A DNA stretch of 64,000 nucleotides from Asterias rubens (GCF_902459465.1 NC_047066.1:8122001-8186000); one strand, 5' to 3'; shown: positions 34,052 to 60,916, numbered from the stretch's first letter. The notes: generated by a model from the sequence alone, not told the origin. Translations and numbers: made by a program.

Positions 34052-34125
34052 CTGGAAAATCAACCACTGATGAGGAGTTAGAAGACATGTTGGAAAGCGG
34101 AAACCCAGCGATATTCACATCCGGT
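34052..34125 (+). CDS. STX1A: Syntaxin-1 exon 7: (T)[24 protein letters not shown]
   Basis: caacag|CT...GGT|gtaagc; 74 nt. Confidence 0.96.
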
Positions 34126-35928: not shown

Positions 35929-36039
35929 GGAGAAATGATTGACAGGATTGAGTTCAACGTAGAACAGTCAGTGGACTACGTAGAAACAGCCAAAATGGAC
36001 ACTAAAAAAGCTGTCAAGTACCAGAGTAAAGCTAGACGG
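35929..36039 (+). CDS. STX1A: Syntaxin-1 exon 9 (SNARE motif, C-half): [37 protein letters not shown]
   Basis: cctatag|GGA...CGG|gtaagc; 111 nt, ends phase 0. Confidence 0.97.
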
Positions 36040-40672: not shown

Positions 40673-42432
40673 ACAATAATTGCTTGAAATCATTGATATG
40701 GCAAACATGGTTGAATCATAATATGCTTATTAACATGGTAATTTTTCTCTTTTCATCTCTCTCTCTCTCTTTATACCCTTGCTTCCCCGACCCTTTTGCT
40801 AAATTTTATTTGATTAATTTTTGTTTTACGCTGCACTTGTTCCCCCACGTTTGATTAACTTTGTGATCTTTCTCAATACACTTTGATTGTTTACTTGTTC
40901 ACTTATCCATCGTGACACATTTGATGCTGTGTTGTTGTGTTATTAATCAACCCATCTGCTGCCCCCACCCCTTGCTGCCAATCATCTGTTCTGAATACCC
41001 TCTCCATCTCGCCCCTCCCCTTCTAAATGCACTTCTGTTTCTCCTTTATTTCCCCCATGTGTGTTATCTCCTTACAAATTTACCTTCACCTTCTACCCCT
41101 TTTACTGTGATCATCTTTTCCTTCCATTTCATGGCCTCTCACATCCTCCTATTGTGTTTTTCCTCCTCTTTGTTTATGCTCCTCCTATTTGTTTTGTGCT
41201 CCTCCCCTTTATATTTATGCTCCTCCTCTTTGTGTGTATGTTCCTTCCTCTTTGTTTATGCTCCTCCTCTTTGTGTGTATGTTCCTCCCTGTGTTTATGC
41301 TCCTCCTCTTTGTGTGTATGTTCCTCCCTCTGTGTTTGTGCTCCTCCTATTTGTGTGTATGTTCCTTCCTCTTTGTTTATGCTCCTCCTCTTTGTGTGTA
41401 TGTTCCTTCCTCTTTGTTTATGCTCCTCCTCTTTGTGTGTATGTTCCTTCCTCTTTGTTTATGCTCCTCCTATTTGTTTTATGCTCCTCCCCTTTATATT
41501 TATGCTCCTCTTTGTGTGTATGTTCCTCCCTGTGTTTATGCTCCTCCTATTTGTGTGTATGTTCCTACCTCTGTGTTTATGCTCCTCCTCTTTGTGTGTA
41601 TGTTCCTCCCTGTGTTTATGCTCCTCCTATTTGTGTGTATGTTCCTACCTCTGTGTTTATGCTCCTCCTCTTTGTGTGTATGTTCCTTCCTCTTTGTTTA
41701 TGCTCCTCCTCTTTGTGTGTATGTTCCTCCCTCTGTGTTTATGCTCCTCCTCTTTGTGTGTATGTTCCTCCCTATGTGTTTATGCTCCTCCTCTTTGTGT
41801 GTATGTTCCTCCCTATGTGTTTATGCTCCTCCTCTTTGTGTGTATGTTCCTCCCTATGTGTTTATGCTCCTCTGTGTGTGTATGTTCCTCCCTGTGTTTA
41901 TGCTCCTCCTCTGTGTGTATGTTCATCCCTCTTTGTTTATGCTCCTCCTATTTGTTTTATGCTCCTCCCCTTTATATTTATGCTCCTCCTCTTTGTGTGT
42001 ATGTTCCTCCCTATGTGTTTATGCTCCTCCTCTGTGTGTGTATGTTCCTCCCTATGTGTTTATGCTCCTCCTCTTTGTGTGTATGTTCCTCCCTATGTGT
42101 TTATGCTACTCCTCTTTGTGTGTTTGTTCCTCCCTATGTGTTCATGCTCCTCTTTGTGTGTATGTTCCTCCCTATGTGTTTATGCTCCTCCTCTTTGTGT
42201 GTATGTTCCTCCCTCTGTGTTTATGCTCCTCCTATTTGTTTTATGCTCCTCTTTATTGTCAACCTTTCTGTTACTTCCCACTCCTATGTTCATTTATACC
42301 CTTTATAACCCACCTCTCCCACACATGCTCCTCCCACTTGCTGTGCACCACCCCCTCACATTGCACCTCCTGCATTCCTCCTCCTGCACTCCTCCTCCTG
42401 CACTCACTCACCCCTCTTGCATTCATCGCTAC
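40673..42432 (+). promoter_or_regulatory. AG-exclusion zone / extended polypyrimidine tract before exon 10a; candidate distant branch point TTAAC (A at 40733)
   Basis: No AG dinucleotide seen between AG 40671-72 and acceptor AG 42433-34; strong Y-tract at 40742-40790. Confidence 0.7.
41150..42250. repeat. ~41-bp pyrimidine/TG-rich minisatellite (two ~20-bp subunits)
   Basis: atgctcctcctctttgtgtgtatgttcctccctctgtgttt repeated ~27 times with variants. Confidence 0.97.
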
Positions 42433-42434
42433 AG

Positions 42435-42518
42435 AAAAAGATATGTATCATGGTGTGCTGTGGGGTCCTGTTGACGGTGTTGGTCATAGTCATAATCACG
42501 ACAGTGGCCCCGTCGTGA
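42435..42518 (+). CDS. STX1A: Alternative terminal TM exon 10a: KKICIMVCCGVLLTVLVIVIITTVAPS*
   Basis: ctacag|AAA AAG ATA TGT...TGA; phase 0; restores KARRKK and the CC pair aligned with human C271/C272; not in the ORF track. Confidence 0.88.
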   Translation, partial: KKICIMVCCGVLLTVLVIVIITTVAPS

Positions 42519-45500
42519 TACCACTTCCTACCACACGTGGGCGCTTTCCATCTTACCACTTCTCTTATAATTCCATCTTGTCCGGACCAAAACATCTACA
42601 CCGCTCGAAAAAAAAAAACTAAAATCGTCTCATACTGGAACGGTCGGCTGGCTTGTACGTGGCTTACCACAGTGTGCTCCAAGAGAGGCGATTATTCAAT
42701 TATTTTGAAGGGGGAAACAAAGAACCCTTGAATGTATTAAGGGTTGTTGTTGAAGTGTGGGATTGTAGACTTGGGAAAAGAAAATGTCATTCAGTAAAGG
42801 ATGAAAGTTGTGTAAGATAAATCGATATAAGAATTTTGTTTCTGTTTTTCTTTTTTAGTTGGGTTAATCAGTTTATATAGAATAGTACAGATTGTGAATA
42901 TAATGTGGATTCGGGGGTGTTTTTTTTCTCTCTCTCGAAAGTTTCAAGTATAGACAGAGGAACTTTATTAGATTGCAGGTTTGAGGAACGGAAAAACAAA
43001 AAAGAATGGATCTCGAGGATGAAGTATGAGGATCTGAATTGTGCATTTTTTGTGCAGTGTTGGTTTGTACCATAGGACTAGAATCTCTAACAGAGTAAGA
43101 CCTCCCTTGTCAATGTTGCTGCATCCATGTAAAACCTAAAACTAAAGCCGCCACGTGCTGAACGCACGCTGTCTTTTGAAAGCTAGCAGAAGAGTATATA
43201 TATTCACGCTAGTAAGTGTGGGGAGTGGCATGAAGGCATAACACACAAATACAAACATTTCATCAAGACGCTTGTATCGTTTAGCAGATGAAGGGTTTTT
43301 CAATGGTTTTTTTAGGTTGGCGTTTGTAGAGACAGCTTTACCCTCAAAAAGGAAAACTCATGTAACAGATTTATTGGTTGCGTTCCTGTAAATTTGTTGT
43401 CAGTTAAGTTTGAACAAATTGAACGACAAATTTGAACACTACTAGATTGTATCAGAAGACAAGACTGCTTTGCAGGACGGCAATGAGTTTTTGGCCCGTG
43501 ACACTCTCAAATAGCAGTTTTATTTACCATTTCTCCGAATCAGAACAGCAGAGTTCATAAGATGAATACCAAATACCTTGGTGGTGTCTTCTTGTTGCTA
43601 GAGACTCTTTTTCTATGGTGTATGTACCCTATGTGTTCAGTGCATTTAAGGACCCGTGACAGTCAGTTTTCATGATGAGTTTTCATGACGATTCTGCAGC
43701 CCCATACATTTTTCTCAAACCAGGAGGTTTTTTCCCGCTTTGATCCCCCTTCCCAGAATCCATCAACGCACTGTTCAATAGACCCCGCCAACACTGCACA
43801 ATAGCAGCAAAATAGCTATTTATAAAAACAGAAATAAAATATATTATACCATTAATAATAGTACAAAAGATATAGTGAGGAGCATCAAAGTGTAACTGTA
43901 TAATATTTAAAACAAAACTACTATCAATTCGAGTATCATTCCATTGGTGTGTGAAGCTTCAACTTGTAGGAGTTTTTTGATTAGGTGAGAAATAACTCCC
44001 GATTTCGGGAGGAACTATATCAGTTTTTAATAGTAGCAGTCTATGTTGTTAAGTATACTCTAAGTTGACTATCCTGTTGTTGAGGTTTGTGACATTTCTA
44101 TTGATAAAAATAATAATAGCGTGTGTTTGTGCGACCATTTTGTAAGTTGACAAAACTGCACCGTGTAGCGTTCAATAAACACAAGTTATATACAACGGGC
44201 GTACAGAATGGGGCACGCTTGTCTCCTTGCAGTCCTGTCACGTTTGTGCAAGAAGCATCACCAGTGCGCCTTCTAGTTCTTATATATAACTCTATGAGTT
44301 CAAGTATTCTCGAATTGTTGGGGAAGTGAGCATGAACAAGTGCGTTTTTAGTTTATGCTGGAAAAGAGTGATGCTGTGCAATTGCCTGTATAGCTCCTGT
44401 AAATGGCCAACTGTTCTAAGTTTCAACAACGAGTCTTGCATATTAGCCCCTAATTATAGCAAAAACAATCAGGCCAGGAATTTCATCTTTGAGAGGGCAA
44501 GGCCATTTTCGTTTTGCAAAGGGCACTTCCATCGGAAAATCTTAAAGTCTATGGAACACTTTTGATAGGAGAGGAAGGCCAAGCCCAGGTGCAACAGAAA
44601 GTAGTACGTCTATGTCTCAAATTCTTTCCCGTGTCAGTGTTTGGATTTTGGACTTCCTTTGAGCAGTTGAGCTATCACGCTTGATTGGTTTAGTCCAGTT
44701 ATGGTAGGTTCCAAGCGCAGACTCTGCGACACTAGGTGGCAGCAGACATACTGGGCAAGTTTGGGTTACTGACGTAGATCTGGACAGCACCATAGATTTA
44801 CCCAGTTTTCTTAAAACCCAACCATTTTACGCCAACATTTTGTGGGAGTGCAGGTATGGCTGTAGCACTTTCCTTTTAACAGGATAGTCAACTCTAGAGT
44901 GTCTTCTTTTTTTCCTTCTTCTTTCTACCAGTGAATTCTTAGAATTATTGTTATTTTTTTATATTGGCATAATTTTAATGTTGGAATTGTTAAACATATT
45001 TTAGAAAGGTATCCTTTCTGTTTTTTGTGTATTTCGGCTTCAGATTTGTATGATATCAAAAGTAAGTGTTGGTTTACTGAATTATGACGACTGTAATTAG
45101 TAAATATAGTTGTAATATTTACTACATTCTAAGTAACTTAAAAAACAAAACTAACATTATGTTAGTGCAACCTATATACTCAAAATATTTGTAGTCATGA
45201 GATAACCACTGTAAATCTATCTATATAGCTGATATTTAGAGCGCGATAAAAACTATTACATTCGTTGTCCTCTTTATGCAATTTTTCGGGACAATTATTT
45301 TTTTGTCAGTGAAATGTCAGTAAGATGTAAAGGTTTTTTTTTTAAATCAAGAATGGCTCTTTTTCTTCGCTTCATATGTGTGCAATCAAAATGGGCTTCT
45401 TTTATGTTTTGTCGCAGTTGTTTTAATAAAAATTATTTGAAGTGTTTAATGGTTATGTTGCAGGGGACTTTGTACGCACGTGCAAGCGCCAAGTACGCAT

Positions 45501-45552
45501 GTGTCAAAATGCAAGTATTCTGATGACAGGGTTTCATTTCATATAAATCATG

Positions 45553-45982
45553 TTATAACACCCCTTACAAATATTCTGCCTTTTCATTGGTTTAGGGCGC
45601 GTCACATGATACGTCTTAGTTTTACTAGAAACGGCGGCCGTGTGATAGTGCATTGTTTGCCGTGTGATAGTCCGATGACTATCACAAGGCGAGCAGTACC
45701 CAGACATCTTTTTACCCACCTCAAACCCAATCAGTTGTACATTTGTGTATCTGAAATGCGTGTACGAACGTTACCTGTACGAGGATGATAAATAGTATGT
45801 TGGGGTGTTATAAAACAAATATTGACTGCTTTAACTCGTGCTATGGTTGAAACTCTGATTCCCTCGGTGATCCTCAGACTGTTCCATTTTCCCTCGGCTG
45901 CTCCTCGGGAAAATAGAACGCTCCGGGGATCACATCGGGAGTCATAGTTTTAACCATAGCACTCGAAGCAGTCAATATTTGT
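45553..45982. mobile_element. Bipartite element: short-IR-bounded segment (45553-45813) plus a 168-bp hairpin (45815-45982)
   Basis: ttataacacccc/ggggtgttataa IR; acaaatattgactgc.../...gcagtcaatatttgt hairpin arms. Confidence 0.65.
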
Positions 45983-47366
45983 ATATTATTACACGGTCAC
46001 GATAACTTTTTACAAATCGACATGTCACAAATCAAAGAAGAATGAGAAGGGATCAATTACTCTATGACTTATTCTCTGATTTGCGGGCTACCATATTTTA
46101 GGGTGCCCATGGAGTGGATCTACCACAGGTCATATTAAATTGTGCCGTTTATTTGTATATTAAAATTACCCAATTCTGGGGTTTATGAGCTGTCACGGTA
46201 TGCTGGGGGAAAATTTGCGTGATTGATCACCCTTGTGAACGAGGTTGGCGCACACACACGCTCAGAATAAAGTGAACAAAGGTTACCCGGTTTGTACGCT
46301 GCCATGTTGCATTCCAAATCTTTTAGTACTCAAATGTTTGCATGCTCTATGAAATAATCAACGGTACAGATTTTTTTTTTTTTTTTGCAAGTCGCCTGAC
46401 ACACAAGGCCTGAAGGCCACTTCAAGGTGTGGGCTACAATTTTTTTTTCCAGAGGATGTTGCCACCTACTCCTAGGGCTTTTACAGTCCATACAGATGTA
46501 GGCTTGGGTATGCTTCTTGAGAAGTCTTACTTACATCTTTTTTTAAAGCTGCCATAACTTATGAAGTACTGGTACAAACGTTAAATGATTGGGGTTTTTT
46601 CTAAAGGGAATCGATAACATCTGGTTTCCACTTAATATAAATAGTTGTTTTTTGCTTAAGAGTCACCAGCTAAAAAGTTGGGGGAAAGTTCCAATCATAT
46701 GGACGAATGATTACATTTACAGTTCTTTCAAGATCCTCCATAAAGTTGTTGCGGTTTCGACATCAAAACCCTTTTTTGTGCGGCTAGTTGTGATGTAACA
46801 TCACAGGTTTGTTTTATGATGTATTAAACTTATGGATTTGAGTAAACCTCAGCTGCCAAAAAAGGGTGGTGGCGGATTCTTCCTTTAAGACTTTGGTGAA
46901 AACGTTCTTGTGCAGTCGTATACCTTTTACTTGGAATAGAGGCAAATAATACGCTATCCAATGCCAAGTAATTGAATAAAGATAATATAAACTGACTGTT
47001 ATTTCTGATAAAAGGATAGATTTTTGTTTCATCAACGTATTGAGAAAGACTTGTTTAGTATAGAGAGAAAAAGGTTTGCTTGGTGTGGTTGAATTTTAAG
47101 GCACGATGCAACGTTGTTGCAGGAATAAAACAAAAGAAAGTTTTTAGAACCTTCATCGTTTAAACTTTAGCAGTTGGCATTTGGCTGTATCCATGGTGCA
47201 TCCTTTAGCCTTTTTTAACAAGAATATGTGTGCGTGGTGAGTTGAAACAAAGCGAACCAAAAACATTTCTTAATAGTGGAAAAAGAAAACTTGATATTGT
47301 AAATCCACTGTTCACTTTCCGAGTAGGCTTTATCCCTAGAGCTTGGAGACACTCCTGTAAGATTAA

Positions 47367-47490
47367 GGCTGTGCCCAAGATGGCAGCTATGGCTACGGCT
47401 AGATTTCTGCGTCGTCATGCGTTAAAGTATGGGACAACACACTTGGCAACAGTCGTAGCCGTAGCTGTAGCCGCCTATTCTGATGCGGCC
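47367..47490. mobile_element. Small Harbinger-like MITE (relative at 62792-63016)
   Basis: ggctgtgcccaagatggcagctatggctacggct / agccgtagctgtagccgcc...gcggcc; TAA/TCA flanks. Confidence 0.6.
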
Positions 47491-50313
47491 TCAGTAAGAA
47501 TCAGATTTGTATTTTTAAACCTTTTAAGGGGTAAATGTCCACCCTTAAATTCTTGTAGTTGCAATGTTACTTGATGGACACAGCTTAACTTGGCATTTAG
47601 TGCTTTACGACACCCCTACCCTATCGAATCAGGGCGGTATTTGAAAGAGCCGTTAAGCAGAGATCATTGCTTTGAACAGAATCAGTGAACCAGTTGCAAG
47701 TGATATACATAGAACATTAACATTTGGCTGGTAATCTGTTTCTGTTTAGTGAGATTGTTTAGTCAAATACATGAAAATGATGTCCCAATTTCATGGCTTG
47801 CTTAGCGCGCACTCACTTCGCTCACTCACTTCGCAGACTCACTTCTGTCAGAGGCTACCTGGAAGCATTGAATGCTATGATGAGCGGTAAGCGCAGAATC
47901 TCGCAGCAAGCGCAGAATTCCGCGATAAGCACACTATCAGGGATAAGTTTCTGACCTGAATTTCAAAGAGTGTTTAGCGCGCAAATCTATGAAGCACAGG
48001 GTAACCAAAATGCTATGTAAGTTGTCTGTGGTTGGTTCCCTGCTTAGCGAATCTCTTCAGCAATATTCTCTGCTAAGCGGCCCCATCAAGTTTGGCCCCG
48101 AGGGTGTGCTTTATCATCATAGAATAAATTGTAACAAATGGAGGTTTATTCAGTGTTTTAAGAGCGGAGAATGTTTTTTATCCTAGCATGGTTGCATGAT
48201 GAGTTAAACACATGTACATGTATATATTATTCGATAAACAGATAAATGTTAATATACAGTAATCATTAATATTTATATATATTCAACCTTTTTACATACT
48301 AGATGTTACCGCAGTTACGTTTTGAATTTCTAGTCAATTTAGAGAGAGATCTGAAGTTTAACTTAGGCTCATTTTTAAATATAGTACAAAATACTGGTAC
48401 ATTGTATATCTTGTAATAATTTAAGAACAAATTTTCCTCTACTGTTAATTTTTTTGCCATGAAACTGTCATCATATTAATCTGTTGATGAAGAAAAATTA
48501 GATTTGTAGATTTTGGTTTTTGTTTTAAAATAGTCTTTTTTATCATACGCAGTTTTCTGACTCTCTCCTTGTATGTTTTTACAAGGTTGTGTGATTATCT
48601 TTTTTTTCATCTGTGTCATCTTTCATTCTTTTTTCGTTCGTCTTTTTTTCCTCTTTTTTTTTTTTTAATTATGCAATTATTTTAAATTTTTGTTTAGTAC
48701 TTATTTGGAGAGAAATGAAGATGATGGATGGAACTTGGGTTTAAACTTAAAAATTAAAATTTTTTTTTTTAAAGATTTTGTCAAGAGAAAAAAATCAAGA
48801 TATGCATGTACGACATTCAGTTTGAGCTACAAAGCGTACATTTGCTAACACTCCTTAAAGAGGAAATTAAACAAGATTGAGCATTTGATTATTTAAAAAA
48901 CATTATTTGGGGTTTTTAAATAAAAAAATTACTTAGGTAACTGAATAACCAACTGAGGGTGCTGTTTGCAATCATGCGTATAAATTGAACACTGCGTATA
49001 CGCTGAGTGAATTCATGCGGGCGGCCACATCGGCTGTGTGACCGTCGCTTCTATCCCTTCATGTAAAAGATCTAAGCTAACTGGTGATCAACCATTGAAG
49101 AAGGAAAAACAAAAGACACAAACAAAAGAAACAAACTAAATCTTATACAAACTAAACTAAAGCAATTCCAATCTTGATTCTACATTTTTGTAAGGGCGTG
49201 GTCAACCTCGTCCCCATTGTTTACTTTATTTTCAACCATGTTTACAATAGTAAACCCTGGGATGGAAACTCCTTACTTGGACCCTGATTGGACAAGGACT
49301 TTACAATATTAGAATATGTTCCATATTCATAGGTACAGCCAGCCACCGGCAACCGACAATGTACAAACAAGCTATGAAATCTGGTACCGTACTACGAGAT
49401 TATGACGAAGATGTGAATTTTAAAAAGTAGCCAGACTATTTTAATTTGCATGCGTATCCAAAAATTTTGGATATGCAAATGATCCAATACCAGGGTGAGA
49501 GAGCGGTCAACCTTGTAACCGCTTGACCAACACTGCGCTCGACACACCCTTGGGACGAGGTTGGGGCGTGGTGGTTTTTTTTCTCAGTATTAAAAGGGCA
49601 CCTCTGTGAGGTAAGATGTACTAGAACATTTCAAGGGGCACCAAGGCAATGGCCAGGGGGCATGGAGGCAACCGCCTCCATTGCCACTGTGTACCAGGTC
49701 TGCTTCCAGTTGTTAACGAGAAAGTATTATCATTGAACTCTTTTATATTCTTCTCTTTTTATTTTGAGTTTATTGTCCCGTATTGAAGACATACATTTTC
49801 TTTTAGAAGTTTTCTTACTGGCTAATCTGTATCTTACATTGAGTTTTAGTATCCTTATTGTCGCCTTACTTTGCAGCCCGTTTTTTTTTTTAAGACTGTT
49901 TGATTCTTTTGACAGATTTTTAAAAAGTTTTGTTTTCCCATATTTGTTTCTCTTTCTCTGGGTTATTAATATTCATGAATAACTTAGTCAATATTACTGT
50001 ATAGTATTTGTATATTGGCGCAAAACTTTACCATAGTTTAGTGAGAAACAAACTCATTAAATAATCTAATTTAAAAAAAATCTTCTTGTAAAGTAGAAAC
50101 TAGATTGAAAAAAAAAAAACATTATTGACAGATTTGCGCAGTCAGTTCCCAGAGTATGTAGCTGTATTTGTGGAACAATTTCTCTGAAATAAAAAATAAA
50201 AGTACTGTACTTAAATCCATTTCAGTTGTTGTGTTACTACATCATTAAAATGTATTTCAATTAATATCGTCATGTTTAATGCCTTATTGATTTATATTTT
50301 TGCTTTTATTCAT

Positions 50314-50892
50314 AAACAAAATTGTCACACGAAGCTGTGTGCTTTCAGATGCTTGATTTCGAGACCTCAAAATCTAATTCTGAGGTCTCAAAGTCAAATT
50401 TTTGGAAAACTACTTCTCTCTCGAAAACTACGTCTTTTCAGGTGGAGCCGTTTCCCACAATGTTTTCTACTATCAACCTCTCCCCATTAATCGTTACCAA
50501 GGCTACTAATTATATTGAGTAATTACCAATAGTGTCCACTGTCTTTAAAGCCATTGGACCCTTTCGGTACAGAAAAAAACAAAAAAAGTTCACAGATTTA
50601 CAAATAATTTACAGGATTTACAAAGGTAATATTAGTCCATGAAATGCTTTACTTTTTGAGAAAACGGTAAAACAATATAAATTCTCGTTAGCGAGAATTA
50701 CGGATTTAATTTAAACACGTGTCATGACACAGCGAAACGCGCGGAAACAAGAGTGGGTTTTCCCGTTATTTTCTCTTGACTCCGATGACCGATTGAGCCT
50801 AAATTTTCACAGGTTTGTTGTTTTATATATAAGTTGTAATACACGAAGTGTGGGACTTGGACAACACTGTTTACCGAAAGGGTCCAATGGCT
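50314..50892. mobile_element. Family A right half (to 50544) abutting a full family B MITE (50549-50892) across one shared TTAA
   Basis: gtccactgtct|TTAA|agccattggaccctttcgg...ccgaaagggtccaatggct|TTAA. Confidence 0.85.
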
Positions 50893-51428
50893 TTAAGGAA
50901 GGGGGTTGCATGATTGACACTGCATGTTGATGTTACGCTCTGAATGTGACACTGGGTTAGTTTGGTTTTGTCAGAGTTTTTCAAGGTGGTTGAGGTCATT
51001 CACACAGAGAACACTGAAAGATTCCCTTCACACAAAAGTTTGTTATGTTTTTATCAATGATGTTCTTCTGTGTGCATGAATGTAATAATGTTCATTTACT
51101 ATTATGTATTTGTTTTAATTGTGTTTTTCCAGCTTTTATTCTAGTGTAGAAACATTAAGAAACACTTTGTTATATATCCCTGCTGCCCCCACACCCCAAT
51201 CTTACCCTTTGTATGACCATGAAAATGTTTACAACTTTTGACAGCCTTTTGTACGGTTAGCTTTGTGAGTATGAACTCTCCATTCTCTTTGTGAAACATA
51301 AGAGGGCGCTATACACTTCTCTTCAGAGCTGCTTTGTACCTAATTTTCAATCTTGTTGAATTATTTTATCTCTGTGGATTTCTTTTGATCTGTTTTGTTG
51401 AGAAGTTAAACAGAATCAGCACAACCAG

Positions 51429-51626
51429 TTTTTGTTTTTTTTTGTTTTTTTTAATTCATCATTTGAACTGATAAATCATATTGCTACACTAACACTGCTA
51501 TGCTTTTTCCACATACTGTGAAATTGTTCACCAACATATTCTTACTAAAAAAAAATAACCATGTTGTTTCCCGTTTTGTTGTTGTAATTGTTTGCTTTGC
51601 TTGTCTCCATTTTTCTTTGTTCCTGC
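51429..51626 (+). promoter_or_regulatory. 198-nt AG-exclusion zone before exon 10b; candidate branch point CTAAC (A at 51492)
   Basis: Last upstream AG at 51427-28; TACACTAAC at 51485-51493. Confidence 0.65.
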
Positions 51627-51628
51627 AG

Positions 51629-51706
51629 AAAATGATTTGCATCGGCATTTGTGTAGCAGTCTTAGTAATCATTCTCGTCATTGTTCTATTATCAACGCTA
51701 ACTTAA
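51629..51706 (+). CDS. STX1A: Alternative terminal TM exon 10b: KMICIGICVAVLVIILVIVLLSTLT*
   Basis: ttttctttgttcctgcag|AAA ATG ATT TGC...TAA; phase 0; 24-residue hydrophobic anchor. Confidence 0.85.
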   Translation, partial: KMICIGICVAVLVIILVIVLLSTLT

Positions 51707-51749
51707 GAGGGCGCTTTCCATAAATCTCCTTTCATGTTACTACAGCCCT

Positions 51750-52135
51750 TTTCAAAACTATGGCTTCAGCTTCGCCTAGGACTTTTAAGCCCGGTTCATA
51801 CTTCCTGTGAATGCAAATCCGAAGCCAATTTTGACATAACAAATTCACAATGCATAATTCGCATCATCAGTTGACTTGTGCTCAACTCCTGCGAAACATT
51901 CGCTGCAAAAACGGAGCTGTGACTTCAGAATTCGATTCGCGTTCGCATTCGCAAGGAAGTATGCACCAGGCTTTAGGCTTCTCCAATGACTTAGGCTTCA
52001 CCTATGGCTTAGGCTTCCCCTATGGCTTAGGCTTCTCCTACGGCTTAGGCTTCTTCTGCCTGTTTGCAGCATCGCAGAAATAACTGACAGACCATCAGAG
52101 TCAGAGCCGAAGCTGAAGCTGTAGTTTTCGAAAAA
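51750..52135. mobile_element. MITE with 18-bp internal repeats and a nested MITE (51788-51972, TTA TSD) in the exon-10b 3' UTR
   Basis: caaaactatggcttcagcttc / gaagctgaagctgtagttttcg TIRs; ttaggcttc-n3-tatggc repeats. Confidence 0.7.
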
Positions 52136-54897
52136 TGGCCTATTGACCCATTGTATAGCACGCAGTGCAATTACATGTACCAGGACCCAATTTCATAGAG
52201 CTGCTTAACAGTAAGCAAAAAGGTGTAAGAGTATTTCATAGCTTAGGGCATTACGCCTATGGTTGTTAACTCTTGTCAGGTTGTCAAGTGTAGAAGTGTT
52301 CCAGGGCGCAATTCCATATTTTAGCCCTGGCGTCAAAATTTGCTCTTAGAGATATCTTCCTTAGTAGAAACATGTGCCAAAACTTTGGTAAGCGCAACAA
52401 AATTGCTTATCACAGAAATGTAGTTTACACACACATTGGCAAATTTTCATCACATATAGTACAAATAGTACACATAATTTGTTCAGCTGATAATCTGTTT
52501 CTGCCGTATTTTTCTATCATCCTTAAGCAACTATTTCTGCAAAACAGTTTCATGGCATTTTGCACTTTCTGCCACTTTGCACATCTTGAAAGCCATTTCA
52601 TTGGGAAAGAAAATTCTGGTTGCATTTCCGCACCCATATTGTTTTTAATATGGATATTAGGTTGTATCGTAAACCTGGGGGTGTCCCTGGTCACTCGACA
52701 GCTAAAGGTTACATGGCTTCTGACTGCCACCTCCCCCGAACAAAGATATTGACTAATAGGGAGATATCTAATATTAGGGATGGATAGCTGAGTTGGTAGA
52801 GGGCCGGTATGTTAATCCGAAGGCCATTCATTAAAGTCCCGACCTCAGTCAGTCAATTGTTCTTTATTCAAACCCAAACTAAAAACAATATTTCTGCTTA
52901 CACAAAACATTAGATTGGGTGCTTTGGGCAACAACAAAAAAACATTTGTCAGAAATGGAAATGGTGGGAAAGATGTTTTAAAAGTAGAATATAATGATTC
53001 ACACAGATATTCCTAAAAGTTGTAAGGTTTTTCCTTTTATAAATCCACCTTTTTGTAGCATAACATCTTTGACGCCACAAAATGGCGCCAAAACTCGAGA
53101 CAATGAAGCAGTTTGCTATTAGGTTTTTTTCTTTAATAACATTTCTGTGTAAAGTAGTTGAAAGGGCTCAGGTTTGTCAAACTAATCTAATCCAAAAGAA
53201 AACAAATATTTCGCCCTTAAATCAGAAGAACAAATGTTGGAAAGTGGCCTGTTATTACCGGCAGAAAAAAACCATACATACTCTACCCAACAGTGTTTTC
53301 TTGTATATATATTTTTTATCGCCTGATATAAATTACCTGTCACTGTCAGGATGCTATATAAAATACCTATTTACTATTTATTATGTAATGTATTTTTCAA
53401 TTATTTTTTTCAAATCACCTGAATTCCAGTAGTAGCCAGTGGTATTTCCTAATGATTGCCTCTTGAGTGATACATTTAATCAAAATTTCTTCCTTGTGTA
53501 AACTCTTTTACAACCACTGTTGCTTTGCGTTTTGAACCTAAAAGGCCCAGGGGTCGATTTCACAAAGAGTTAGGACTCGTCTTATCTCGAGTTAGGACGA
53601 GTAACTCGTCCTAACTTAGGATTAATCTTAAGGTCTGCATGCTACAGTGCAGGGTTGGGACTTGTGTTAAGTCCTAAGATTAGTCCTAAGTTAGGAAGAG
53701 TTTGGTGAAATCGACGGCAGCTTGTTTAACTTTTTTCAAAATTCAATATTAGAAAAAGTATCTTGCAGGTTTCTGTTGCCTTGGTACATTACATCCCAAA
53801 GCCAATAGTATATCTTGAGTCTTAATGCCCTCTCATGATAACATGAATATTATGGGTCGTACATGTATGATTGATGACTCTTCTTGAGTACATAAGAAAG
53901 ATTATCCATGTATGGCACTTTGGGAATACATAAAATTGATCCGTACATGTACGACCTTGGCAATGAAAGAGTTAAAGAGGAAGGGAAATGTCTACTTCAA
54001 TTTGATGGTGTACTCATTTTCTAGTAGATAGAGTCCTTGTATGAGTGGGGAAAATTGAAAAGCCGCTAACCTCACTTTAAAATGGTGCAAATTGCCATGA
54101 AATTCAATACCCTTCCGGTGCAAATTTTGTCAACATTAAAAATATCCGACTACATTCTGAGAAAAGCGGGTCTTTACAATTTTGCACGGTGATGTTTTTG
54201 TTCTTTCCTTACCTTTTTTCAGTGTGACGTTTGCAACCTGACGTCATTGGATGTCAACAACTAATGGGTCTTAACATTTTCAAGGAGGAATTTTTCCTCC
54301 GTCTAAATGTCAACTTCAAGGCTGTTTTGATAGAATATCATCAAAAGTCACCACTGAACCAAAACATCCCGTACAAAAAATGTACAGACCCATTTTTCTT
54401 AGAATATGTCATAGGATTTTTTGGATGTTGACAAATTTTCCCCTGGAAGGTTACTGAATTCAGTAGCAATTTTCACCATTTTAATGTGACTTGTAATTTT
54501 TCACAACTTTTTTTAAACATCTATTCCATCATGCGTAACCCAATTGTATGCCAGCAAAAATATTACTTAAGGATTTTTGTCTAGTCCCAGTCGGGAAGCA
54601 TAATTCATGTGAGTTGATGACAGTTTGTAGACTAATTATTTTGTATTGATATTTCCATTCTACCTTACTGTGCAGATTAGAAAAATAAATGTTCATACTA
54701 TGGAAATGTAATTAGAGGCGATGTTTATTGGAAAATTAGGTAATATTTAAAGTGACATTTGTTTCATACCTGATATAATTATTTAACATTTTAATTATAT
54801 ACCTTCAGTAATATCTTTCAGAGAAAGTACAATTTACCTACTATTTTTTGGTTGTCAAGTTATGGGAAACAAGAAACTCAAGTTAATTTAAGTACTA

Positions 54898-55288
54898 CAG
54901 GCCTGGAATTTCAATTTGAGAGGGGCACTTTCATAGGAAAATCTTAAAGTCTATGGGAAACTTCTAAAGGGGCACCAAAGCCAAGACCAGGGCCCAATTT
55001 CATAGAGCTGCTAAGCACACAAATTTGCTTAGCATGAAATTTCTTTCTGGGTAAAAACATGATTACAACCAAAATTTCCGCATGATTTTCAGGATAAGCA
55101 AACAACAGCTAAATACCAGTAACAAGCAATGAGCAACAAATGGAAATTTGGTTGGTAATCCTGTTTTAATCCATGAACAAAGTTCTTGCTTAGTAATTTT
55201 TTTATTTTTGTGCTTAGCAGCTCTATGAAGTTGGGCCCAGGGCAACAGAGGCCATGGTCTCCGTAGCCTCCGTGAAATTCCAGGACTG
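54898..55288. mobile_element. Family D MITE interrupted by a family C MITE (54991-55237, CAG TSD)
   Basis: Host ccaagac-CAG-ggcaa is split: CAG|GGCCC...GGGCC|CAG. Confidence 0.88.
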
Positions 55289-55981
55289 ATAAAAAAAAGA
55301 GGAACACGTTAGTTTTATTTCTTCTAATCAACTAATTTTAAACCTGCCCAACCACTATATATTTTTTATAAGGCAAGGCATAACAATATAATTAACTGTG
55401 GATTACAATTAAGTACAAAATATATGTCTCTGCTCATATTTTAAAGTTGTCCAGGAGCTATTATGAGTAAGTCATTAAATATTTTTGGGGAAATTTAAGA
55501 TTTCACAGATATCGGAGATAATATTTCACAGATATCTGAGAGATATATTCTGCTACAAAGGGTCAAAAGGTCATGAACTATTAATCTGCATCTGGGGGAT
55601 AGAAGATGTAAGTTTCTAATTTTGTAGATAAGAGTAATGTGAATTTTAGAGCTTTTGCTTGTTCTTTTGAATTGATTGTTTATAATTCAGTCAACAAAAA
55701 CTCTGCTCAGAGTTCACAAGTACATGTAAAACAAAATAAAACACTCTAGCGTAGACCGCTATTTGGTTCTCCACTAGAACAATATTTGATGCGTCTGTAT
55801 GTCTGATTAAGAATGGTAATACTTTTATCTGTCTACTTGTATCATCACCTATTTTTTGTTTAAAGCACCGTCATCATTTTTTTTTCCAAATGCACTATCA
55901 GTAATGTTTTCAAAAGTCATTGGCACTGATTTTGCACATATCTCATCCAATCAGGCCTCAAGCTAGATATTATAAGTTATC

Positions 55982-56339
55982 ACACAAGCGCGAGTGGAAT
56001 ACAGAAAAATATAGCGCTTCTGCGTCCTTGGATATGGGACGCAGACGCGCTATATTTTTTTCGTATTCCACGAGCGCGCGTGTTACAACAAATTTATCTT
56101 CCAGTCTCACGTGCAACTCGCAAAGTTTAAAATTTCAGAACGTTATTTCACGACGAAGTGCACAAAGTTTAGAACGTAATTTTTGTGGTCTAAGCGTGAC
56201 GCATTGACCTTCACAATACGCACTCTGTAATAAAAAGAGAGGAAGTAGTATATAAAACAGAGGAAGTAGTATATATGTTTTTATCCCCTTGGTAGTTCGA
56301 GCAACTGATTGGTGGATTAGCGCATACTGGAAGATAAAT
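55982..56339. mobile_element. Bipartite element: hairpin (55982-56083) plus a segment bounded by a 14-bp IR (56092-56339)
   Basis: atttatcttccagt/actggaagataaat; gtggaatac...tatagcgc-tctgcgtcc / ggacgcaga-gcgctata...gtattccac. Confidence 0.65.
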
Positions 56340-57163
56340 ATTGATATCAATAATATTTCATTCATCTTTTCATATTCATTCATTCATTTGTTTATTGGTG
56401 ACATGGATTAAACGACAGGAATTTTTTCCTACTGCACTTTGCACAAACATTAACAGTCCTGTATGCTTCATTTTTGAAAAGGCAAGGGCACCAAGGCATT
56501 TTCTCTTTGACAAAGGGCACCCTATGAGGAAATTGTAAATTTCTACAGGAGCATTTCAAGGGCACCAAGGCAATGGCAAGGGGCAACGGAGGCAATCGCC
56601 TCCGTTGCCTCCGTGAAGTATCAGGCCTGCATTAAGTATCTCACCAAATAATCACAATATCAATACTTAAATAGCTTCTCAAGTGTAAACATTTTAACAA
56701 GAGTGCTAGATCATTTAATTTTTTTTTTTTACAAACTAGCTTTACTTGGAGGGGCGCTTCAAAATAACAATACTCGGCCACTTTTTCTACCGCATGGTTT
56801 TTTTTCCATAAATTTGTTATCTTCTGGATTGAAACTGTAAAGTCTTACAAATGACCTTCATTGGATTCTTGATTATGTTGTCAAAATTTATTGCACGCTT
56901 CAGTCCTCTTTGTGTCTTTTTCAAAGTTAAATGAAATTTGTTGGGGTTTATGATCGTGTTTTTACATAATATTCATCTAAAAATGTGCATTGCCTGGAAA
57001 CTTTTTTTTATGGCATTCTTTTAATTTGATGTCAGTACTTCAATTTATTTGGAGGAGGAAATTGTTATTGCTAGTATTTTTGGTTGTCTTCATTTTTGTG
57101 AAGTCATTTTGTTCGGGTATTGAACTGTTTGTGCAACTGCACCATTTGCATGTAAAGAACCAA

Positions 57164-57639
57164 GGCCCAATTTTATGAAGCTGCTTAAAGGCACGTACAC
57201 ATTTGTTAATTGTCAAAGACCAGTGTTCACACTTGGTGTATCCCATCATAAGCATAAAATAACCAGCCTGTGAAAGTTTTGGCTCAATTGGTCATCAAAG
57301 ATGCGAGAAAATGATGAAAGAAAAAACACCCTTGTTGGACGAATTTGTGTGCTTTCAGATAGGAATAAAAGACTTCTAGCTAGAAGTCTTTTAATATTTT
57401 AGTGAGAAATTACCTCTTTCTCAAAAACTACGTTACTTCAGAGGGATTCGTTTCCCACAATGTTTAATACTATCAACAGCTCTCCAATGCTCGATACCAA
57501 GTCAGTTTTTAACAAATAAACAAACCAAGAAACCAGTCATAGATTTAATGCATATATGGCATGGCGTTTCACCTGGTAAACTTATTTTTGTTGTGCTAAT
57601 TATACCTCATGTTCTTAAGCAGCTCTATGAAATTGTGCC
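57164..57639. mobile_element. Family C MITE with a family-A-related element inserted at its TTAA (from 57189)
   Basis: ggcccaattttatgaagctgc|TTAA|aggcacgtacac...; right TIR gcagctctatgaaattgtgcc. Confidence 0.7.
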
Positions 57640-59977
57640 CATGGCTGTAAATAAGAAAATTATGTTTTTAATTTTGTACAGTATTGTCTTACTTTGGCGT
57701 CTTATGTTATAAACATATCTTGTATACACACATATCTTGTCATCATTATGTGTTGGTGTCATTTTTTTGTCTGGGTTAGCAGTGATATCTGTCGGGTATT
57801 TGGTGACCATTTAGTAGACCTATATGATGATGCAATTATTGACCACTTGCACAGCGCGAAAAACTTCTCCACACAATGCGCGTCCATTATTATTTTCACC
57901 ATTTTGGGAGTCAATTCCTTTGTGTACATTTTGACTCCCAAAATGGCGCACAGGTTAGGAGCAGAGAAGTTTACTGAGCTTTGTGACACTCAAAAAGGTG
58001 CCAGACTATTTGTTGACCCCCAGCCTCGATTTGGGTTACATTTGGTTGGAATGATTGCATCATGATAGTGATCTACATTGAGGACTGAGGCAATAGACCA
58101 GGTACTCCAAGCATGATCAAAACGTTAACTACAATTTGCAATGTTGTAACATGCATGGAAGTTCTTAGTCTTGACCCAAGATGTCAGTGATCGATAATGG
58201 ACAGTGTACAACCACATTACACTATCCACTATTGACCAGTGACGACTTGGGCTAGGATAGGAAGTAAGTGCCTGGCCTTAGTCCTGTATAGCATTTTTCA
58301 TTAGGCTTTGGTTCAATCCGTATTATCCATTTTGGAGCAGTCTGTGTTTTACTGGCTTGCTCAGCATCAAATGTATACTGAAGCTGGAGTCATTCCAAGC
58401 CAAGGTTTGAAAAAGCTCCTTTTCTGGGAATCTTGTATCAGTCATTACCACAGGTGAAACATTCTGGAACAATGGTTTCAACCACTCTTGTTTTTTCTTT
58501 GTTAAATGAGCATCAAGTAATCATTTTCAAAATTGTTAATTGCCAGTGTATTCCAATGAAATATCACACACAAAAAGTTTTTAAATGGTTCTCATCGAAT
58601 AAGTCATGATCGCACTTTAGTACATGTATACCCAAGGACCAGGGCCCAATTCCATGGCTCTGCTTACTGCCAAATTCTGTGCTTACAATCATCATTCTTC
58701 ACTTGCGCAAGTGCAAGCGCGGAATTTCTGCGCTAGCTGTGTAAGCGTAAAATGCCTAGTTACATCGTTCAAAGTGGTCCGCTTCTTAACTTTGAATGGA
58801 AGGGGGCTTAAAGATACTAGCACCATTATAATAGTCTACTGAGGGTCAATTGCACTTATTTTTTTTCCAAAGAAACTTATCAATTGAAATTTGAATTCTT
58901 GATTTGAAAAGATAAGCAGACCTTACAGAGTGTATGTACAACTTACATTGTTTTGTTCACATTTGTCTGTTGTGTAATTCTCTTGAATTTGTTTTATTCT
59001 AAATTAATGTGTAATTGTTTGTATGTATAGTCTTCATAAAGAAAGAAATGTTCTTCTTTGTGTCGAAGAGTTAATCTCATTTTCTATATGCTTGTATAAA
59101 TTTGTTCAGACCCAAAATATTACGGTTCTGGCGCAGCTAGTATAGCAGAAATAAGCAAGAGCGGTGAGCGAATACTTGACCAGAGCTGCGACGTGTAGCT
59201 CTCGAATTAACCATCTTGACCATGTTCCAGTGCATGGTTCGAAATAGTCAATCTCCCTGTGCTCTATGGTTTCTGGTTATAGTCTAGTCGGTCTAGTAGC
59301 CACCCGAACTTGCTCAATAACAAACTGGAGTTTAAAAAAAATTAAAAAAATCCTTTTTAAATTTCCGATACAAAAGTGTTGTTTTTGTGTTTGTATTTTT
59401 CTTATGTTTTTTTTTTCTCTTTTGTGTGTGTTTGTTGTCACCCAGACTATTCCCATACGCTCTGTAACTGTTTTCTAAAATATCTTTGATGTAAACAAAC
59501 ACATCAGATTCAGAAGAATCTGGGAAATCTTATCATTGATTATGTTGTTTCTTCCAGCTTATATAGCAAAATGAAATTTTTTTAGATGAAAATTTTTAAT
59601 TAAATTGCAATTTATAGTCAAAAATATGAATTTCTTTATTTTCAAAGTCTCCTTTCACGTATGTAATTCTTCCAGGTTTTTTATTGAAATTTTTAAAAAT
59701 TTTGTTTTCATCATCATCAAACCTACCTTGAAACTCCTTTTCCCATCAACTTTCCACGTCTTGAAACCCACAAGTGGCACACACTTCTTTAAAAGAACAA
59801 CTATAAATATAAATATAAATAGTAGACTTGCAGGGCCAACACTCCCTCAAAAGAGATTTTACACAAGCCTACGATTTATATTTGTATCTAGAGTTATTCT
59901 TATTCTTCACAACATGCAAAGCTTCAAACACCATTTACACTTCTTAATGTTTCACTCTAACTTTTTGTCCTCCACAG

Positions 59978-60064
59978 AAAAAGATATGCATCTTGATATG
60001 CTGTGGAGTTCTCATTTTGGTGATAGTCATTTTGGTAGCATCTTTGGTTCCTACTTTGGGGTAA
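59978..60064 (+). CDS. STX1A: Alternative terminal TM exon 10c: KKICILICCGVLILVIVILVASLVPTLG*
   Basis: ctctaactttttgtcctccacag|AAA AAG ATA TGC...TAA; CTAAC branch 18 nt upstream; phase 0; paralogous to 10a. Confidence 0.9.
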   Translation, partial: KKICILICCGVLILVIVILVASLVPTLG

Positions 60065-60167
60065 ACCATCACATCACTTCTCTACTAGGAATCTACCTCC
60101 AAAGGATCTAGGAGGGGGCTACGGTGTGCACTTACCACGGGTTGCATGTCGGTTGCACTTCATAACG

Positions 60168-60510
60168 GGGCACAATTTCATAGAGATGCTTAAAGGCACT
60201 GGACACTTTGGTAAATGTCAAAGACCAGTATTCTCACTTGGTGTATCTCAACATATGCATAAAATAACAAACCTGTGAAAATTTGAACTCAATCGGTCGT
60301 CGAAGTTGCGAGATAATAATGGAAGAAAAAACACCCTTGTCACACAAAGTTGTTTGCTTTCAGATCCTTGATTTCTAGACCTCAAATTCTAAATCTGAGG
60401 TCTCGAAATTAAATTCGTGGAAAATTACTTCTTTCTCGAAAACTTCATTACTTCAGAGGGTGCTGTTTCTCACAAACCTGTGAACACTTGGGCTCAATTG
60501 GTCATGGAAG
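60168..60510. mobile_element. Family C TIR followed at the same TTAA by a family A element (from 60194)
   Basis: gggcacaatttcatagagatgc|TTAA|aggcactggacac. Confidence 0.75.
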
Positions 60511-60916
60511 TTGCGATGAGAATACTTTCACAAAGAGCTAAGATTTGTCTAAACTGTGTAACACTGGTAATAACTCTTAGCAATGTGTGATGTCACACCA
60601 CAAATCACTATGGTGATACTGACAACTCATCTTAAAATGAATCTTAGAGTTGTGTGAAATCAAGCACTGGTTGTTGTCGATCAAACTATCCTATTATTTT
60701 GTGGTATACTTCTACTCCGATTGGAGCCCTCTTAGGATGTCGGTTAATCCTCTGTCAGGATACCATGAAGTGACAAAGACCAACAATAGTAGCATTTTGT
60801 GCTTCACAAGAATCATTTTGAGCAACTTAGAAACATATGCAATGGGAACTTTTGGACACAAGGTGGCAGCAGACTTACCAAGTAAATCCATTGTTCCTGG
60901 TAATGTGCGAATGCTC

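What the first reader, a model, noticed from the sequence alone, without database searches (positions are those of the whole stretch)
42435..60064. Syntaxin-1 with three paralogous alternative transmembrane-anchor exons
Seen: after exon 9 (...KARR, phase 0), three YAG|AAA exons each encode a full anchor plus stop. 10a is KKICIMVCCGVLLTVLVIVIITTVAPS, 10b is KMICIGICVAVLVIILVIVLLSTLT and 10c is KKICILICCGVLILVIVILVASLVPTLG. Over the first 12 codons 10a and 10c differ mostly at synonymous sites (TGT/TGC, GGG/GGA, GTC/GTT, CTG/CTC), which points to exon duplication under purifying selection. Known: alternative C-termini exist in C. elegans unc-64 and mammalian STX2/STX3, while vertebrate STX1A has one main TM exon. 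Inference: a single Qa-SNARE gene swaps anchors by alternative last-exon choice (for example neuron vs egg cortical granule vs other secretory cells). The exons are too short for the ORF track and are easily missed by annotation.
Basis: partly seen in the sequence, partly recalled or inferred. Interest (0 to 1): 0.85.

Follow-up and report, generated by a model that had tools for sequence, protein, structure and literature searches.

The report
Sea-star syntaxin-1 alternative membrane-anchor exons
The three short exons are real alternative endings of one sea-star syntaxin-1 gene, each giving the same fusion protein a different membrane anchor. The arrangement is conserved, has a fourth anchor exon just outside the window, and is already annotated in related sea stars, so it is solid rather than new.

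Summary
After exon 9 (ends 36039, ...KARR, phase 0) three YAG-preceded exons at 42435, 51629 and 59978 each encode a full anchor plus stop.

The window is the Asterias rubens syntaxin-like gene. The only A. rubens RefSeq product in the protein cluster I listed (210 aa) equals window exons 4-9 plus 10b exactly.

RefSeq for the congener A. amurensis lists four isoforms: 10c-type, 10a-type, 10b-type and a fourth anchor (KQVAIS...). That fourth exon maps about 2 kb beyond the window end.

Patiria and Acanthaster carry the same four anchor types in the same a-b-c-d order. Anchor dN/dS is 0.08-0.17 while the flanking introns are unalignable.

- An mRNA contig from a related star joins 36039 directly to 51629.
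- One RNA run holds about 85% of the sampled words of both the 10a and the 10b exon plus 3' region.
- Each exon is followed by a 97-99% conserved block, against about 90% in introns.

So alternative last-exon choice is supported. It is the same device as C. elegans unc-64 and mammalian STX2/STX3, and I also found such exon arrays in a wasp and an unidentified invertebrate.

The claim that annotation misses these exons holds only for A. rubens. Tissue roles are untested.

The most unusual feature is a 0.6-1.8 kb AG-free pyrimidine tract before 10a in all four stars.

The parts
29939..30013 (+). Syntaxin exon 4 (first exon inside the window; ...VKEDLEQLMADIKKTANRVRGKLK)
   Evidence: tblastn and splice sites. 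The related star's mRNA contig L009 aligns to exactly 29939-30013.
30677..30750 (+). Exon 5
33294..33402 (+). Exon 6
   Evidence: The X5 RNA contig carries the joint 33402->34052.
34052..34125 (+). Exon 7
   Evidence: Sixteen split reads in RNA run X11 join 34125->34973, GT..AG.
34973..35110 (+). Exon 8 (SNARE motif; its last codon CAG gives the Q of ...MLVESQ)
   Evidence: Twenty-one split reads in X11 join 35110->35929.
35929..36039 (+). Exon 9, the common exon ending ...YQSKARR in phase 0; shared donor at 36039|gtaagc
   Evidence: The X5 RNA contig stops 2 nt past 36039.
39145..40577 (+). 121-nt tandem array (about 12 copies) in the intron before 10a
   Evidence: A. amurensis has 7 copies.
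40673..42432 (+). 1760-nt AG-free, 75% pyrimidine zone running up to the 10a acceptor. It contains a 41-nt CT-rich tandem array (41153-42251, 27 copies).
   Evidence: The equivalent AG-free zones are 988 nt in A. amurensis, 1602 nt in Patiria and 613 nt in Acanthaster. Patiria has a 41-nt array of 25 copies.
42435..42518 (+). Alternative terminal exon 10a, coding part (27 aa anchor plus TGA)
   Evidence: Ortholog isoforms are A. amurensis X2, Patiria X3/X4 and Acanthaster X2/X4. dN/dS is 0.10 against Patiria.
42519..44685 (+). Putative 10a 3'UTR: a block 97-99% identical to A. amurensis
   Evidence: Runs X5, X6, X7, X9, X10, X16 and X21 hold 0.84-0.91 of the sampled words of 42435-43300.
51629..51706 (+). 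Alternative terminal exon 10b, coding part (25 aa anchor plus TAA)
   Evidence: The A. rubens RefSeq product P0398 equals window exons 4-9 plus 10b. mRNA contig L009 joins 36039 to 51629.
51707..52380 (+). 10b 3'UTR. It is contiguous with the exon in mRNA contig L009 to at least 52157, and 95-100% identical to A. amurensis.
59978..60064 (+). Alternative terminal exon 10c, coding part (28 aa anchor plus TAA)
   Evidence: Ortholog isoforms are A. amurensis X1, Patiria X1/X2 and Acanthaster X1/X3. dN/dS is 0.08.
60065..60730 (+). Putative 10c 3'UTR: a block 95-99% identical to A. amurensis, with a poly(A) signal hexamer at 60408

Best explanation
This is the 3' half of the Asterias rubens syntaxin-1 orthologue.

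**Mechanism.** One pre-mRNA carries nine common exons that encode the Habc and SNARE regions. The exon 9 donor at 36039 sits right after the polybasic KARR, in phase 0. It is spliced to one of four tandem terminal exons: a, b and c in the window, and d about 2 kb beyond it.

Each terminal exon supplies a complete tail anchor, its own stop codon and its own 3'UTR/poly(A) region. The cytosolic fusion machinery is therefore constant and only the membrane anchor and 3'UTR change.

**How the anchors differ.**
- Cysteines near the membrane face: three in a and c (C..CC), two in b, one in d.
- Length: 24-28 residues.
- Extracellular tip.

**Inferred, not shown.**
- These differences set palmitoylation, clustering or membrane-domain preference for different secretory cell types.
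- The choice is regulated as an alternative-last-exon decision. Using the proximal exon 10a competes with skipping it.
- The 0.6-1.8 kb AG-free pyrimidine tract in front of 10a acts as a platform for a pyrimidine-tract-binding repressor or a distant branch point. This would be analogous to CELF/UNC-75 control of unc-64 exons 8a/8b.
For: **Identity.** P0398 (RefSeq syntaxin-like, Asterias rubens) is identical to the window splice product of exons 4-9 plus 10b.

**Isoforms in relatives.**
- A. amurensis X1-X4 carry the c, a, b and d anchors.
- Patiria X1-X6 and Acanthaster X1-X6 carry the same four anchor types.

**Genomic order.** The order a-b-c-d after exon 9 is kept in A. amurensis, Patiria and Acanthaster. 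Anchors cluster by type, not by species.

**Selection.**
- dN/dS against Patiria is 0.10, 0.17 and 0.08 for a, b and c. Frames, acceptors and stops are kept, while the flanking introns give no blastn hit.
- Between the two Asterias species there are 0-2 substitutions per anchor exon, against about 9% intron divergence.

**RNA.**
- Split reads confirm the exon 7-8 and 8-9 junctions.
- mRNA contig L009 of a related star runs through exons 4 to 9 and then directly into 51629.
- Run X5 has a spliced exon 6-9 contig and no depth on unique intron, so it is RNA.
- X5 holds 0.84 of the sampled words of 10a plus 3' region and 0.85 of those of 10b plus 3' region.
- The X5 contig ends 2 nt past exon 9. 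That is the exact length of sequence shared by AAA-starting a/b/c and AAG-starting d.

**Separate 3'UTRs.** Blocks of 97-99% identity start at each anchor exon.

**AG-free tract before 10a.** It is 1760, 988, 1602 and 613 nt in the four stars, against at most 218 nt before the other anchor exons.

**Precedent.** unc-64 A/B and STX2 (PMC4946901); long AG exclusion zones mark alternatively spliced exons (PMC1431707).
Against: - No junction-spanning read from this species was seen for 10a or 10c. The single read-laying run had its loose-end table swamped by an intronic repeat.
- The only A. rubens product in the protein cluster I listed uses 10b.
- Run identities are coded, and X5's library type is not on record. 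Its RNA nature is inferred.
- RefSeq isoforms in the relatives are computed models. That they rest on transcript alignments is my knowledge of the NCBI pipeline and was not checked here.
- Nothing here tests tissue specificity, palmitoylation, or binding of any factor to the pyrimidine tract.
Confidence: 0.85

Rival explanations
1. Only one terminal exon (10b) is used in this species. 10a and 10c are unused duplicated relics or belong to something else.
For: The only A. rubens product in the listed cluster uses 10b. The two assembled star transcripts found (P0402, P0403) are b-type. No junction read to 10a or 10c was recovered.
Against: - 10a and 10c keep acceptor, frame and stop in four sea-star genomes, with dN/dS about 0.1 amid unalignable introns.
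- There are 1-2 substitutions between the Asterias congeners, against about 9% in introns.
- RefSeq isoforms with these anchors exist in three relatives.
- The 10a exon plus 866 nt downstream is 84-91% covered in runs that behave as RNA.
- Conserved 3'UTR-like blocks follow both exons.
Confidence: 0.05
2. All anchors are spliced in, but they are functionally interchangeable. The array persists without anchor-specific roles.
For: Transmembrane helices tolerate many hydrophobic substitutions. Anchor dN/dS (0.08-0.17, and 0.5 for d) is well above that of the constant exons (0.009). No tissue data were obtained.
Against: - Each anchor type is separately recognisable in two sea-star orders, and types a and c also in a brittle star.
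- Exon order is kept.
- Each exon has its own conserved 3'UTR block.
- In C. elegans the B anchor cannot replace the A anchor in neurons (PMC4946901).
Confidence: 0.1
3. The exons are mutually exclusive internal exons that are all followed by a shared downstream 3' exon, rather than alternative last exons.
For: The window ends before the gene does. The 3' ends of the transcripts were not mapped.
Against: - Every exon carries its own stop.
- mRNA contig L009 continues colinearly with the genome for at least 450 nt past the 10b stop.
- Conserved blocks run 0.7-2.2 kb directly from each exon.
- In the A. amurensis locus record the gene range (protein X1) ends at the stop codon of exon d.
Confidence: 0.03

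Closest known systems
C. elegans unc-64 (syntaxin-1) isoforms A/B, made from alternative 3' exons 8a/8b and regulated by UNC-75/CELF (PMC4946901)
   Same: It is the same gene family. The break point is at the start of the hydrophobic anchor, and the alternative exons each encode an anchor of about 25 residues. Isoform choice is tissue-dependent in the worm, where A is neuronal and B is non-neuronal.
   Different: The sea stars have four anchors in a fixed a-b-c-d order. The proximal exon is preceded by a kilobase-scale AG-free pyrimidine tract. No regulator or tissue pattern is known here.
Mammalian STX2 (2A/2B) and STX3 (3A/3B) alternative C-terminal exons
   Same: These are paralogues of syntaxin-1 in which alternative splicing gives different membrane anchors. 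The STX2 case is described in PMC4946901. The STX3 case is from my own knowledge.
   Different: The vertebrate STX1A/STX1B anchors seen here are of one type per gene. In the star the diversity sits in the single syntaxin-1 orthologue. As I recall, STX3B also swaps part of the SNARE motif, which does not happen in the star.
RefSeq isoform sets: A. amurensis XP_071791076-79, Patiria miniata X1-X6, Acanthaster planci X1-X6
   Same: They are direct orthologues. The a, b and c anchors are 96-100% identical in A. amurensis and 64-89% identical in Patiria and Acanthaster. Exon order is the same.
   Different: In the protein cluster I listed, A. rubens has only a truncated b-type model. Exons 10a and 10c of the window appear in no A. 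rubens product found here.
SLMAP alternative tail anchors TA1/TA2 (PMC2712456)
   Same: It is a tail-anchored protein whose alternatively spliced anchors differ in hydrophobic profile. According to that paper's title and abstract, the profiles dictate subcellular targeting.
   Different: It is an unrelated protein and not a SNARE. I use it only as a functional analogy.

Membership tests
Syntaxin-1-type plasma-membrane Qa-SNARE | Syntaxin N-terminal (Habc) domain plus SNARE motif | tested here: met
   The database's precomputed Pfam families for full-length cluster members such as P0274 are PF00804 and PF05739. Window exons 4-9 are 192/193 identical to A. amurensis X1. The N-terminal exons 1-3 are outside the window.
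Syntaxin-1-type plasma-membrane Qa-SNARE | Central glutamine of the SNARE motif, in the context ...MLVESQ|GEMIDRIE | tested here: met
   Read directly: the last codon of exon 8 (35108-35110) is CAG, within MAMLVESQ. Its assignment as the zero-layer Q is from my knowledge of rat STX1A.
Syntaxin-1-type plasma-membrane Qa-SNARE | C-terminal tail anchor directly after a polybasic juxtamembrane stretch | tested here: met
   KARR is followed by K(K/M) and then 22-25 uncharged residues in each of 10a, 10b and 10c.
Alternative-last-exon tail-anchor switching (unc-64 / STX2 type) | Two or more downstream exons, each with an acceptor in the right phase, a full anchor and its own stop | tested here: met
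   The fourth exon is seen in A. amurensis, Patiria and Acanthaster.
Alternative-last-exon tail-anchor switching (unc-64 / STX2 type) | Transcripts joining the common exon to each alternative exon | tested here: inconclusive
   - 10b is met: the RefSeq product is identical and mRNA contig L009 of a related star carries the junction 36039|51629.
- 10a rests on RNA-run word coverage of 0.84-0.91 and on orthologous RefSeq isoforms.
- 10c rests on orthologous RefSeq isoforms only.
- No junction read from this species was obtained for 10a or 10c.
Alternative-last-exon tail-anchor switching (unc-64 / STX2 type) | Separate 3'UTR and poly(A) site for each exon | tested here: inconclusive
   Conserved blocks begin at each exon. 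L009 is colinear with the genome for 450 nt past the 10b stop. Poly(A) signal hexamers are present. Poly(A) ends were not mapped.
Alternative-last-exon tail-anchor switching (unc-64 / STX2 type) | Cell-type-specific isoform choice driven by an RNA-binding protein | not tested
   There is only an indirect hint: the AG-free pyrimidine tract before 10a in four species.

The most novel reading that the evidence does not exclude
The anchor-exon array may be an ancient, actively regulated switch rather than a sea-star peculiarity.

- Arrays of KK-, KM- and KL-type anchor exons after the KARR exon occur in sea stars, a wasp and an unidentified invertebrate genome. A KM-type tail also occurs in a fish-like transcript. 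The bilaterian syntaxin-1 gene may therefore already have had at least two anchor types.
- Vertebrates may later have partly replaced this splicing diversity with the paralogues STX1A, 1B, 2 and 3.
- In sea stars the proximal exon is gated by a kilobase-scale AG-free pyrimidine tract. In Asterias and Patiria that tract holds a 41-nt minisatellite of about 25 copies whose sequence has turned over while its position, period and composition are kept.
Probability: 0.3. Interest if true: 0.55.

Novelty: new member of a known kind. Interest (0 to 1): 0.3.

Why it matters
It corrects and completes the gene model of a model sea star. The A. rubens syntaxin model I found is N-terminally truncated and shows one of four anchors.

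It also gives a clean natural experiment on what the syntaxin transmembrane anchor contributes to exocytosis. The protein has one invariant cytosolic machine and four anchors, kept apart since before the two sea-star orders sampled here diverged.

The anchors differ in their number of juxtamembrane cysteines, and each has its own 3'UTR. The conserved AG-free tract before exon 10a is a testable handle on how an alternative last exon is chosen.

None of this changes the accepted picture of syntaxin biology.

Tried and rejected
- **Short-peptide protein searches** (exon 9 plus anchor). They found only genomic exon-9 ORFs running into the intron, plus one fish-like KM-tail transcript. No star isoforms appeared, because of the length filter.
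- **Exhaustive HMMER search with exon 8**. It returned mostly exon-ORF fragments. I used these only as scaffolds.
- **First scaffold alignment**. It misaligned two exon pieces and was rebuilt as A4 and A5. A5 then retrieved the echinoderm isoforms.
- **Read laying at exon 9**. It was meant to show what follows donor 36039, but the loose-end table was filled by a high-copy intronic repeat at 33433-33754.
- **Loci L006 and L007** have no anchor exon within 10 kb of exon 9. I did not walk further.
- **P0388** is not on record for a locus look-up. P0326 worked.
- **Loci L002-L004.** I first took these for an echinoderm. Their KL-type anchors and exon 8 look closer to unnamed sequences that I guessed to be lophotrochozoan, so I treat them only as an unidentified invertebrate.
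- **Deep homology of KM-type anchors across phyla.** Overall identity of 10b to the wasp KM and KK anchors is equal at 0.44. Only the first 11-12 residues favour a KM class, so I keep this as a possibility only.
- **Literature searches** for an echinoderm description found none.
Full report
**1. Observation**

The sequence is as described. Exon 9 ends ...AGA CGG|gtaagc at 36039, in phase 0. Three downstream exons each start after a pyrimidine tract plus YAG.

| Exon | Coordinates | Anchor length |
|---|---|---|
| 10a | 42435-42518 | 27 aa |
| 10b | 51629-51706 | 25 aa |
| 10c | 59978-60064 | 28 aa |

Each begins with K(K/M)IC, encodes an uncharged anchor and ends in a stop.

I scanned the whole window for AG followed by K/R, a run of at least 18 uncharged residues and a stop within 20-40 codons. 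The scan returns only these three inside the gene, one unrelated hit at 13873, and none on the minus strand.

The upstream gene structure matches the conserved syntaxin-1 structure. Exons 4-9 are at 29939-30013, 30677-30750, 33294-33402, 34052-34125, 34973-35110 and 35929-36039. Exons 1-3 are not in the window. In the congener the intron between exons 3 and 4 is 31 kb, which places them just upstream of base 1.

**2. Identity of the locus**

I built a profile from window exon translations placed on scaffold proteins (A5). It retrieved echinoderm syntaxin isoforms.

Cluster listing and sequence comparison show that RefSeq "syntaxin-like [Asterias rubens]" is residue-for-residue the window's splice product. 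That product (P0398, 210 aa) runs from the Met inside exon 4 through exon 9 plus 10b. The window is therefore A. rubens, a sea star, and that model uses 10b only.

The A. amurensis locus (L008) is colinear with the window at about 88-96% identity.

**3. The other anchors in relatives**

A. amurensis RefSeq has four isoforms that differ in the tail.

| Isoform | Anchor type | Relation to the window |
|---|---|---|
| X1 | 10c-type | one residue different |
| X2 | 10a-type | one residue different |
| X3 | 10b-type | identical |
| X4 | fourth type, KQVAISILCGVILVIVIVAIITLA | not in the window |

Patiria miniata (X1-X6) and Acanthaster planci (X1-X6) show the same four anchor types.

In all three genomes the exons lie in the order a-b-c-d after exon 9.

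| Genome (locus) | a | b | c | d |
|---|---|---|---|---|
| A. amurensis (L008) | 62203 | 71019 | 79757 | 86005 |
| Patiria (L011) | 62801 | 70081 | 74708 | 80711 |
| Acanthaster (L012) | 40390 | 47336 | 50218 | 56305 |

The window end aligns to L008 position 83988. The fourth exon should therefore sit about 2 kb beyond base 64000, and tblastn finds no d-type exon inside the window.

Anchors cluster by type rather than by species. A brittle star (Amphiura) has recognisable a- and c-type tails.

**4. Selection**

Between the two Asterias species the anchor exons differ at 1, 0 and 2 nucleotides, while the surrounding intron differs by about 9%.

Against Patiria the flanking introns give no blastn hit, yet frame, acceptor and stop are kept. 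Nei-Gojobori estimates are:

| Exon(s) | dN/dS |
|---|---|
| 10a | 0.10 |
| 10b | 0.17 |
| 10c | 0.08 |
| Constant exons 6, 8, 9 | 0.009 |
| d (A. amurensis vs Patiria) | about 0.5 |

It is clearly not met.

**5. RNA evidence**

- Raw RNA reads of run X11 give 16 and 21 split reads across the exon 7-8 and 8-9 junctions.
- Run X5 has a 961-nt contig joining exons 6-7-8-9 and shows zero depth on unique intron. It therefore behaves as RNA.
- X5 holds 0.85 of the sampled words of 10b plus 3' region and 0.84 of those of 10a plus 3' region. Six further runs hold 0.87-0.91 for 10a.
- The X5 contig ends exactly 2 nt past exon 9. Exons a, b and c begin AAA, and in A. amurensis exon d begins AAG. Two shared letters is what a de Bruijn contig would keep if both a d-type and an a/b/c-type continuation were present. 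This is an inference, because the two letters were not shown.
- A Logan mRNA contig from a related star (L009, about 95% identical in coding exons) aligns to window exons 4 to 9 and then directly to 51628/9. It continues colinearly to 52157. This is direct evidence for the 36039|51629 junction and for 10b being a long terminal exon.

I did not obtain junction reads to 10a or 10c in this species.

That RefSeq alternative isoforms rest on transcript alignments is my knowledge of the NCBI pipeline. It was not tested here.

**6. Separate 3'UTRs**

Identity to A. amurensis jumps from 77-92% before each exon to 97-99% from the exon onwards.

| Exon | Conserved block | Approximate length |
|---|---|---|
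| 10a | 42435-44685 | 2.2 kb |
| 10b | 51629-52380 | 0.75 kb, patchier to 53.6 kb |
| 10c | 59828-60728 | 0.75 kb |

This fits three independent 3'UTRs, and so alternative last exons rather than internal mutually exclusive exons.

**7. How the choice might be made (inferred)**

The stretch without any AG upstream of the 10a acceptor is much longer than for the other anchor exons.

| Species | AG-free stretch before 10a |
|---|---|
| A. rubens | 1760 nt |
| A. amurensis | 988 nt |
| Patiria | 1602 nt |
| Acanthaster | 613 nt |

The stretch is 71-76% pyrimidine in all four. Before the other anchor exons it is 50-218 nt.

In A. rubens the zone contains a 41-nt CT-rich tandem array of 27 copies, and A. 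amurensis has 7 copies. Patiria has a 41-nt CT-rich array of 25 copies in the same place, with a different unit sequence. Acanthaster shows no array.

Long AG exclusion zones mark distant branch points and a higher prevalence of alternative splicing in human exons (PMC1431707).

I therefore propose that use of the proximal exon 10a is gated through this tract. Skipping it would give access to b, c and d. This is by analogy with CELF/UNC-75 control of unc-64 exons 8a/8b (PMC4946901). No binding or branch-point data exist.

**8. What differs between the products**

The cytosolic part is invariant. The anchors differ in three ways:

- Cysteine content: a and c have C...CC, b has two separated cysteines, and d has one.
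- Length.
- Extracellular tip.

Effects on palmitoylation, clustering or membrane-domain preference are plausible but untested. The neuron/egg/other assignment is speculation.

**9. Comparison with what is known**

The device is the one described for C. elegans unc-64 A/B and for mammalian STX2 (PMC4946901). From my own knowledge it also applies to STX3.

- The wasp Phymastichus has a duplicated exon 9 followed by KM-, KL- and KK-type anchor exons.
- An unidentified invertebrate genome (L003) has three anchor exons.
- Hemichordate, sea urchin, brittle star, nematode and insect RefSeq or assembled proteins show alternative tails.

I found no paper describing the echinoderm case. The isoforms are nevertheless in public annotation.

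**10. Verdict**

It is a new member of a known kind and is already captured by annotation in sister species. Interest is modest at 0.3. The conserved AG-free tract and minisatellite before 10a, and the possible antiquity of the anchor types, are the parts worth a follow-up.

Noticed in passing
window 33433-33754 (intron 6): This is a high-copy repeat with thousands-fold RNA-seq depth in all runs. Reads join opposite strands at 33433-33457/33719. Most copies carry a 35-nt insert at 33554/33555 that the window copy lacks. It looks like a hairpin-forming, MITE-like element that is transcribed genome-wide.
   Followed up: no
window 35169-35471 (intron 8): A second repeat, with about 100-200x depth in the RNA runs and many variant letters.
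   Followed up: no
window 42539-42551 and 51709-51721: The 13-mer GGGCGCTTTCCAT occurs exactly twice in 64 kb, both on the + strand. It lies 21 nt after the 10a stop codon and 3 nt after the 10b stop codon. It is identical in A. amurensis. In Patiria a GAGGGCGC core sits at both corresponding places. It may be a shared 3'UTR element or a duplication remnant.
   Followed up: partly
window 41153-42251; L011 61667-62703; L008 61732-62009: A 41-nt-period CT-rich tandem array lies directly upstream of exon 10a in Asterias (27 and 7 copies) and in Patiria (25 copies). Period, position and composition are the same but the unit sequence differs.
   Followed up: partly
window 29939 onward; P0398: The A. 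rubens RefSeq model is N-terminally truncated. It has 210 aa and starts at a Met inside exon 4. Exons 1-3 exist in A. amurensis at L008 about 9.9-18 kb and should lie just upstream of the window.
   Followed up: partly
L002 499-606 and 1276-1383; L007 8573-8656: The unidentified invertebrate genomes (ENA ERZ25069870 and ERZ25069866) carry two tandem copies of exon 6 and a partial extra copy of exon 8. This suggests further mutually exclusive exons in their syntaxin gene.
   Followed up: no
L010 28170-28280 and 28887-29000; P0273; P0223; P0238: A wasp, the pearl oyster Pinctada and other, unidentified proteins have a tandem divergent second copy of exon 9, the C-terminal half of the SNARE motif. 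The sea star lacks this.
   Followed up: no
L005 (Logan SRR11241629 contig, 1537 nt): This is a vertebrate-like STX1 transcript contig. It contains a divergent exon-9 copy, retained intron, the normal exon 9 and a KM-type tail (KMIFIGICIAV...) that resembles sea-star 10b.
   Followed up: partly
L008 1-4171 and L010 3343-4182: An Arf/Ras-family small-GTPase gene lies immediately upstream of the syntaxin gene in both the sea star and the wasp. This may be old microsynteny.
   Followed up: no
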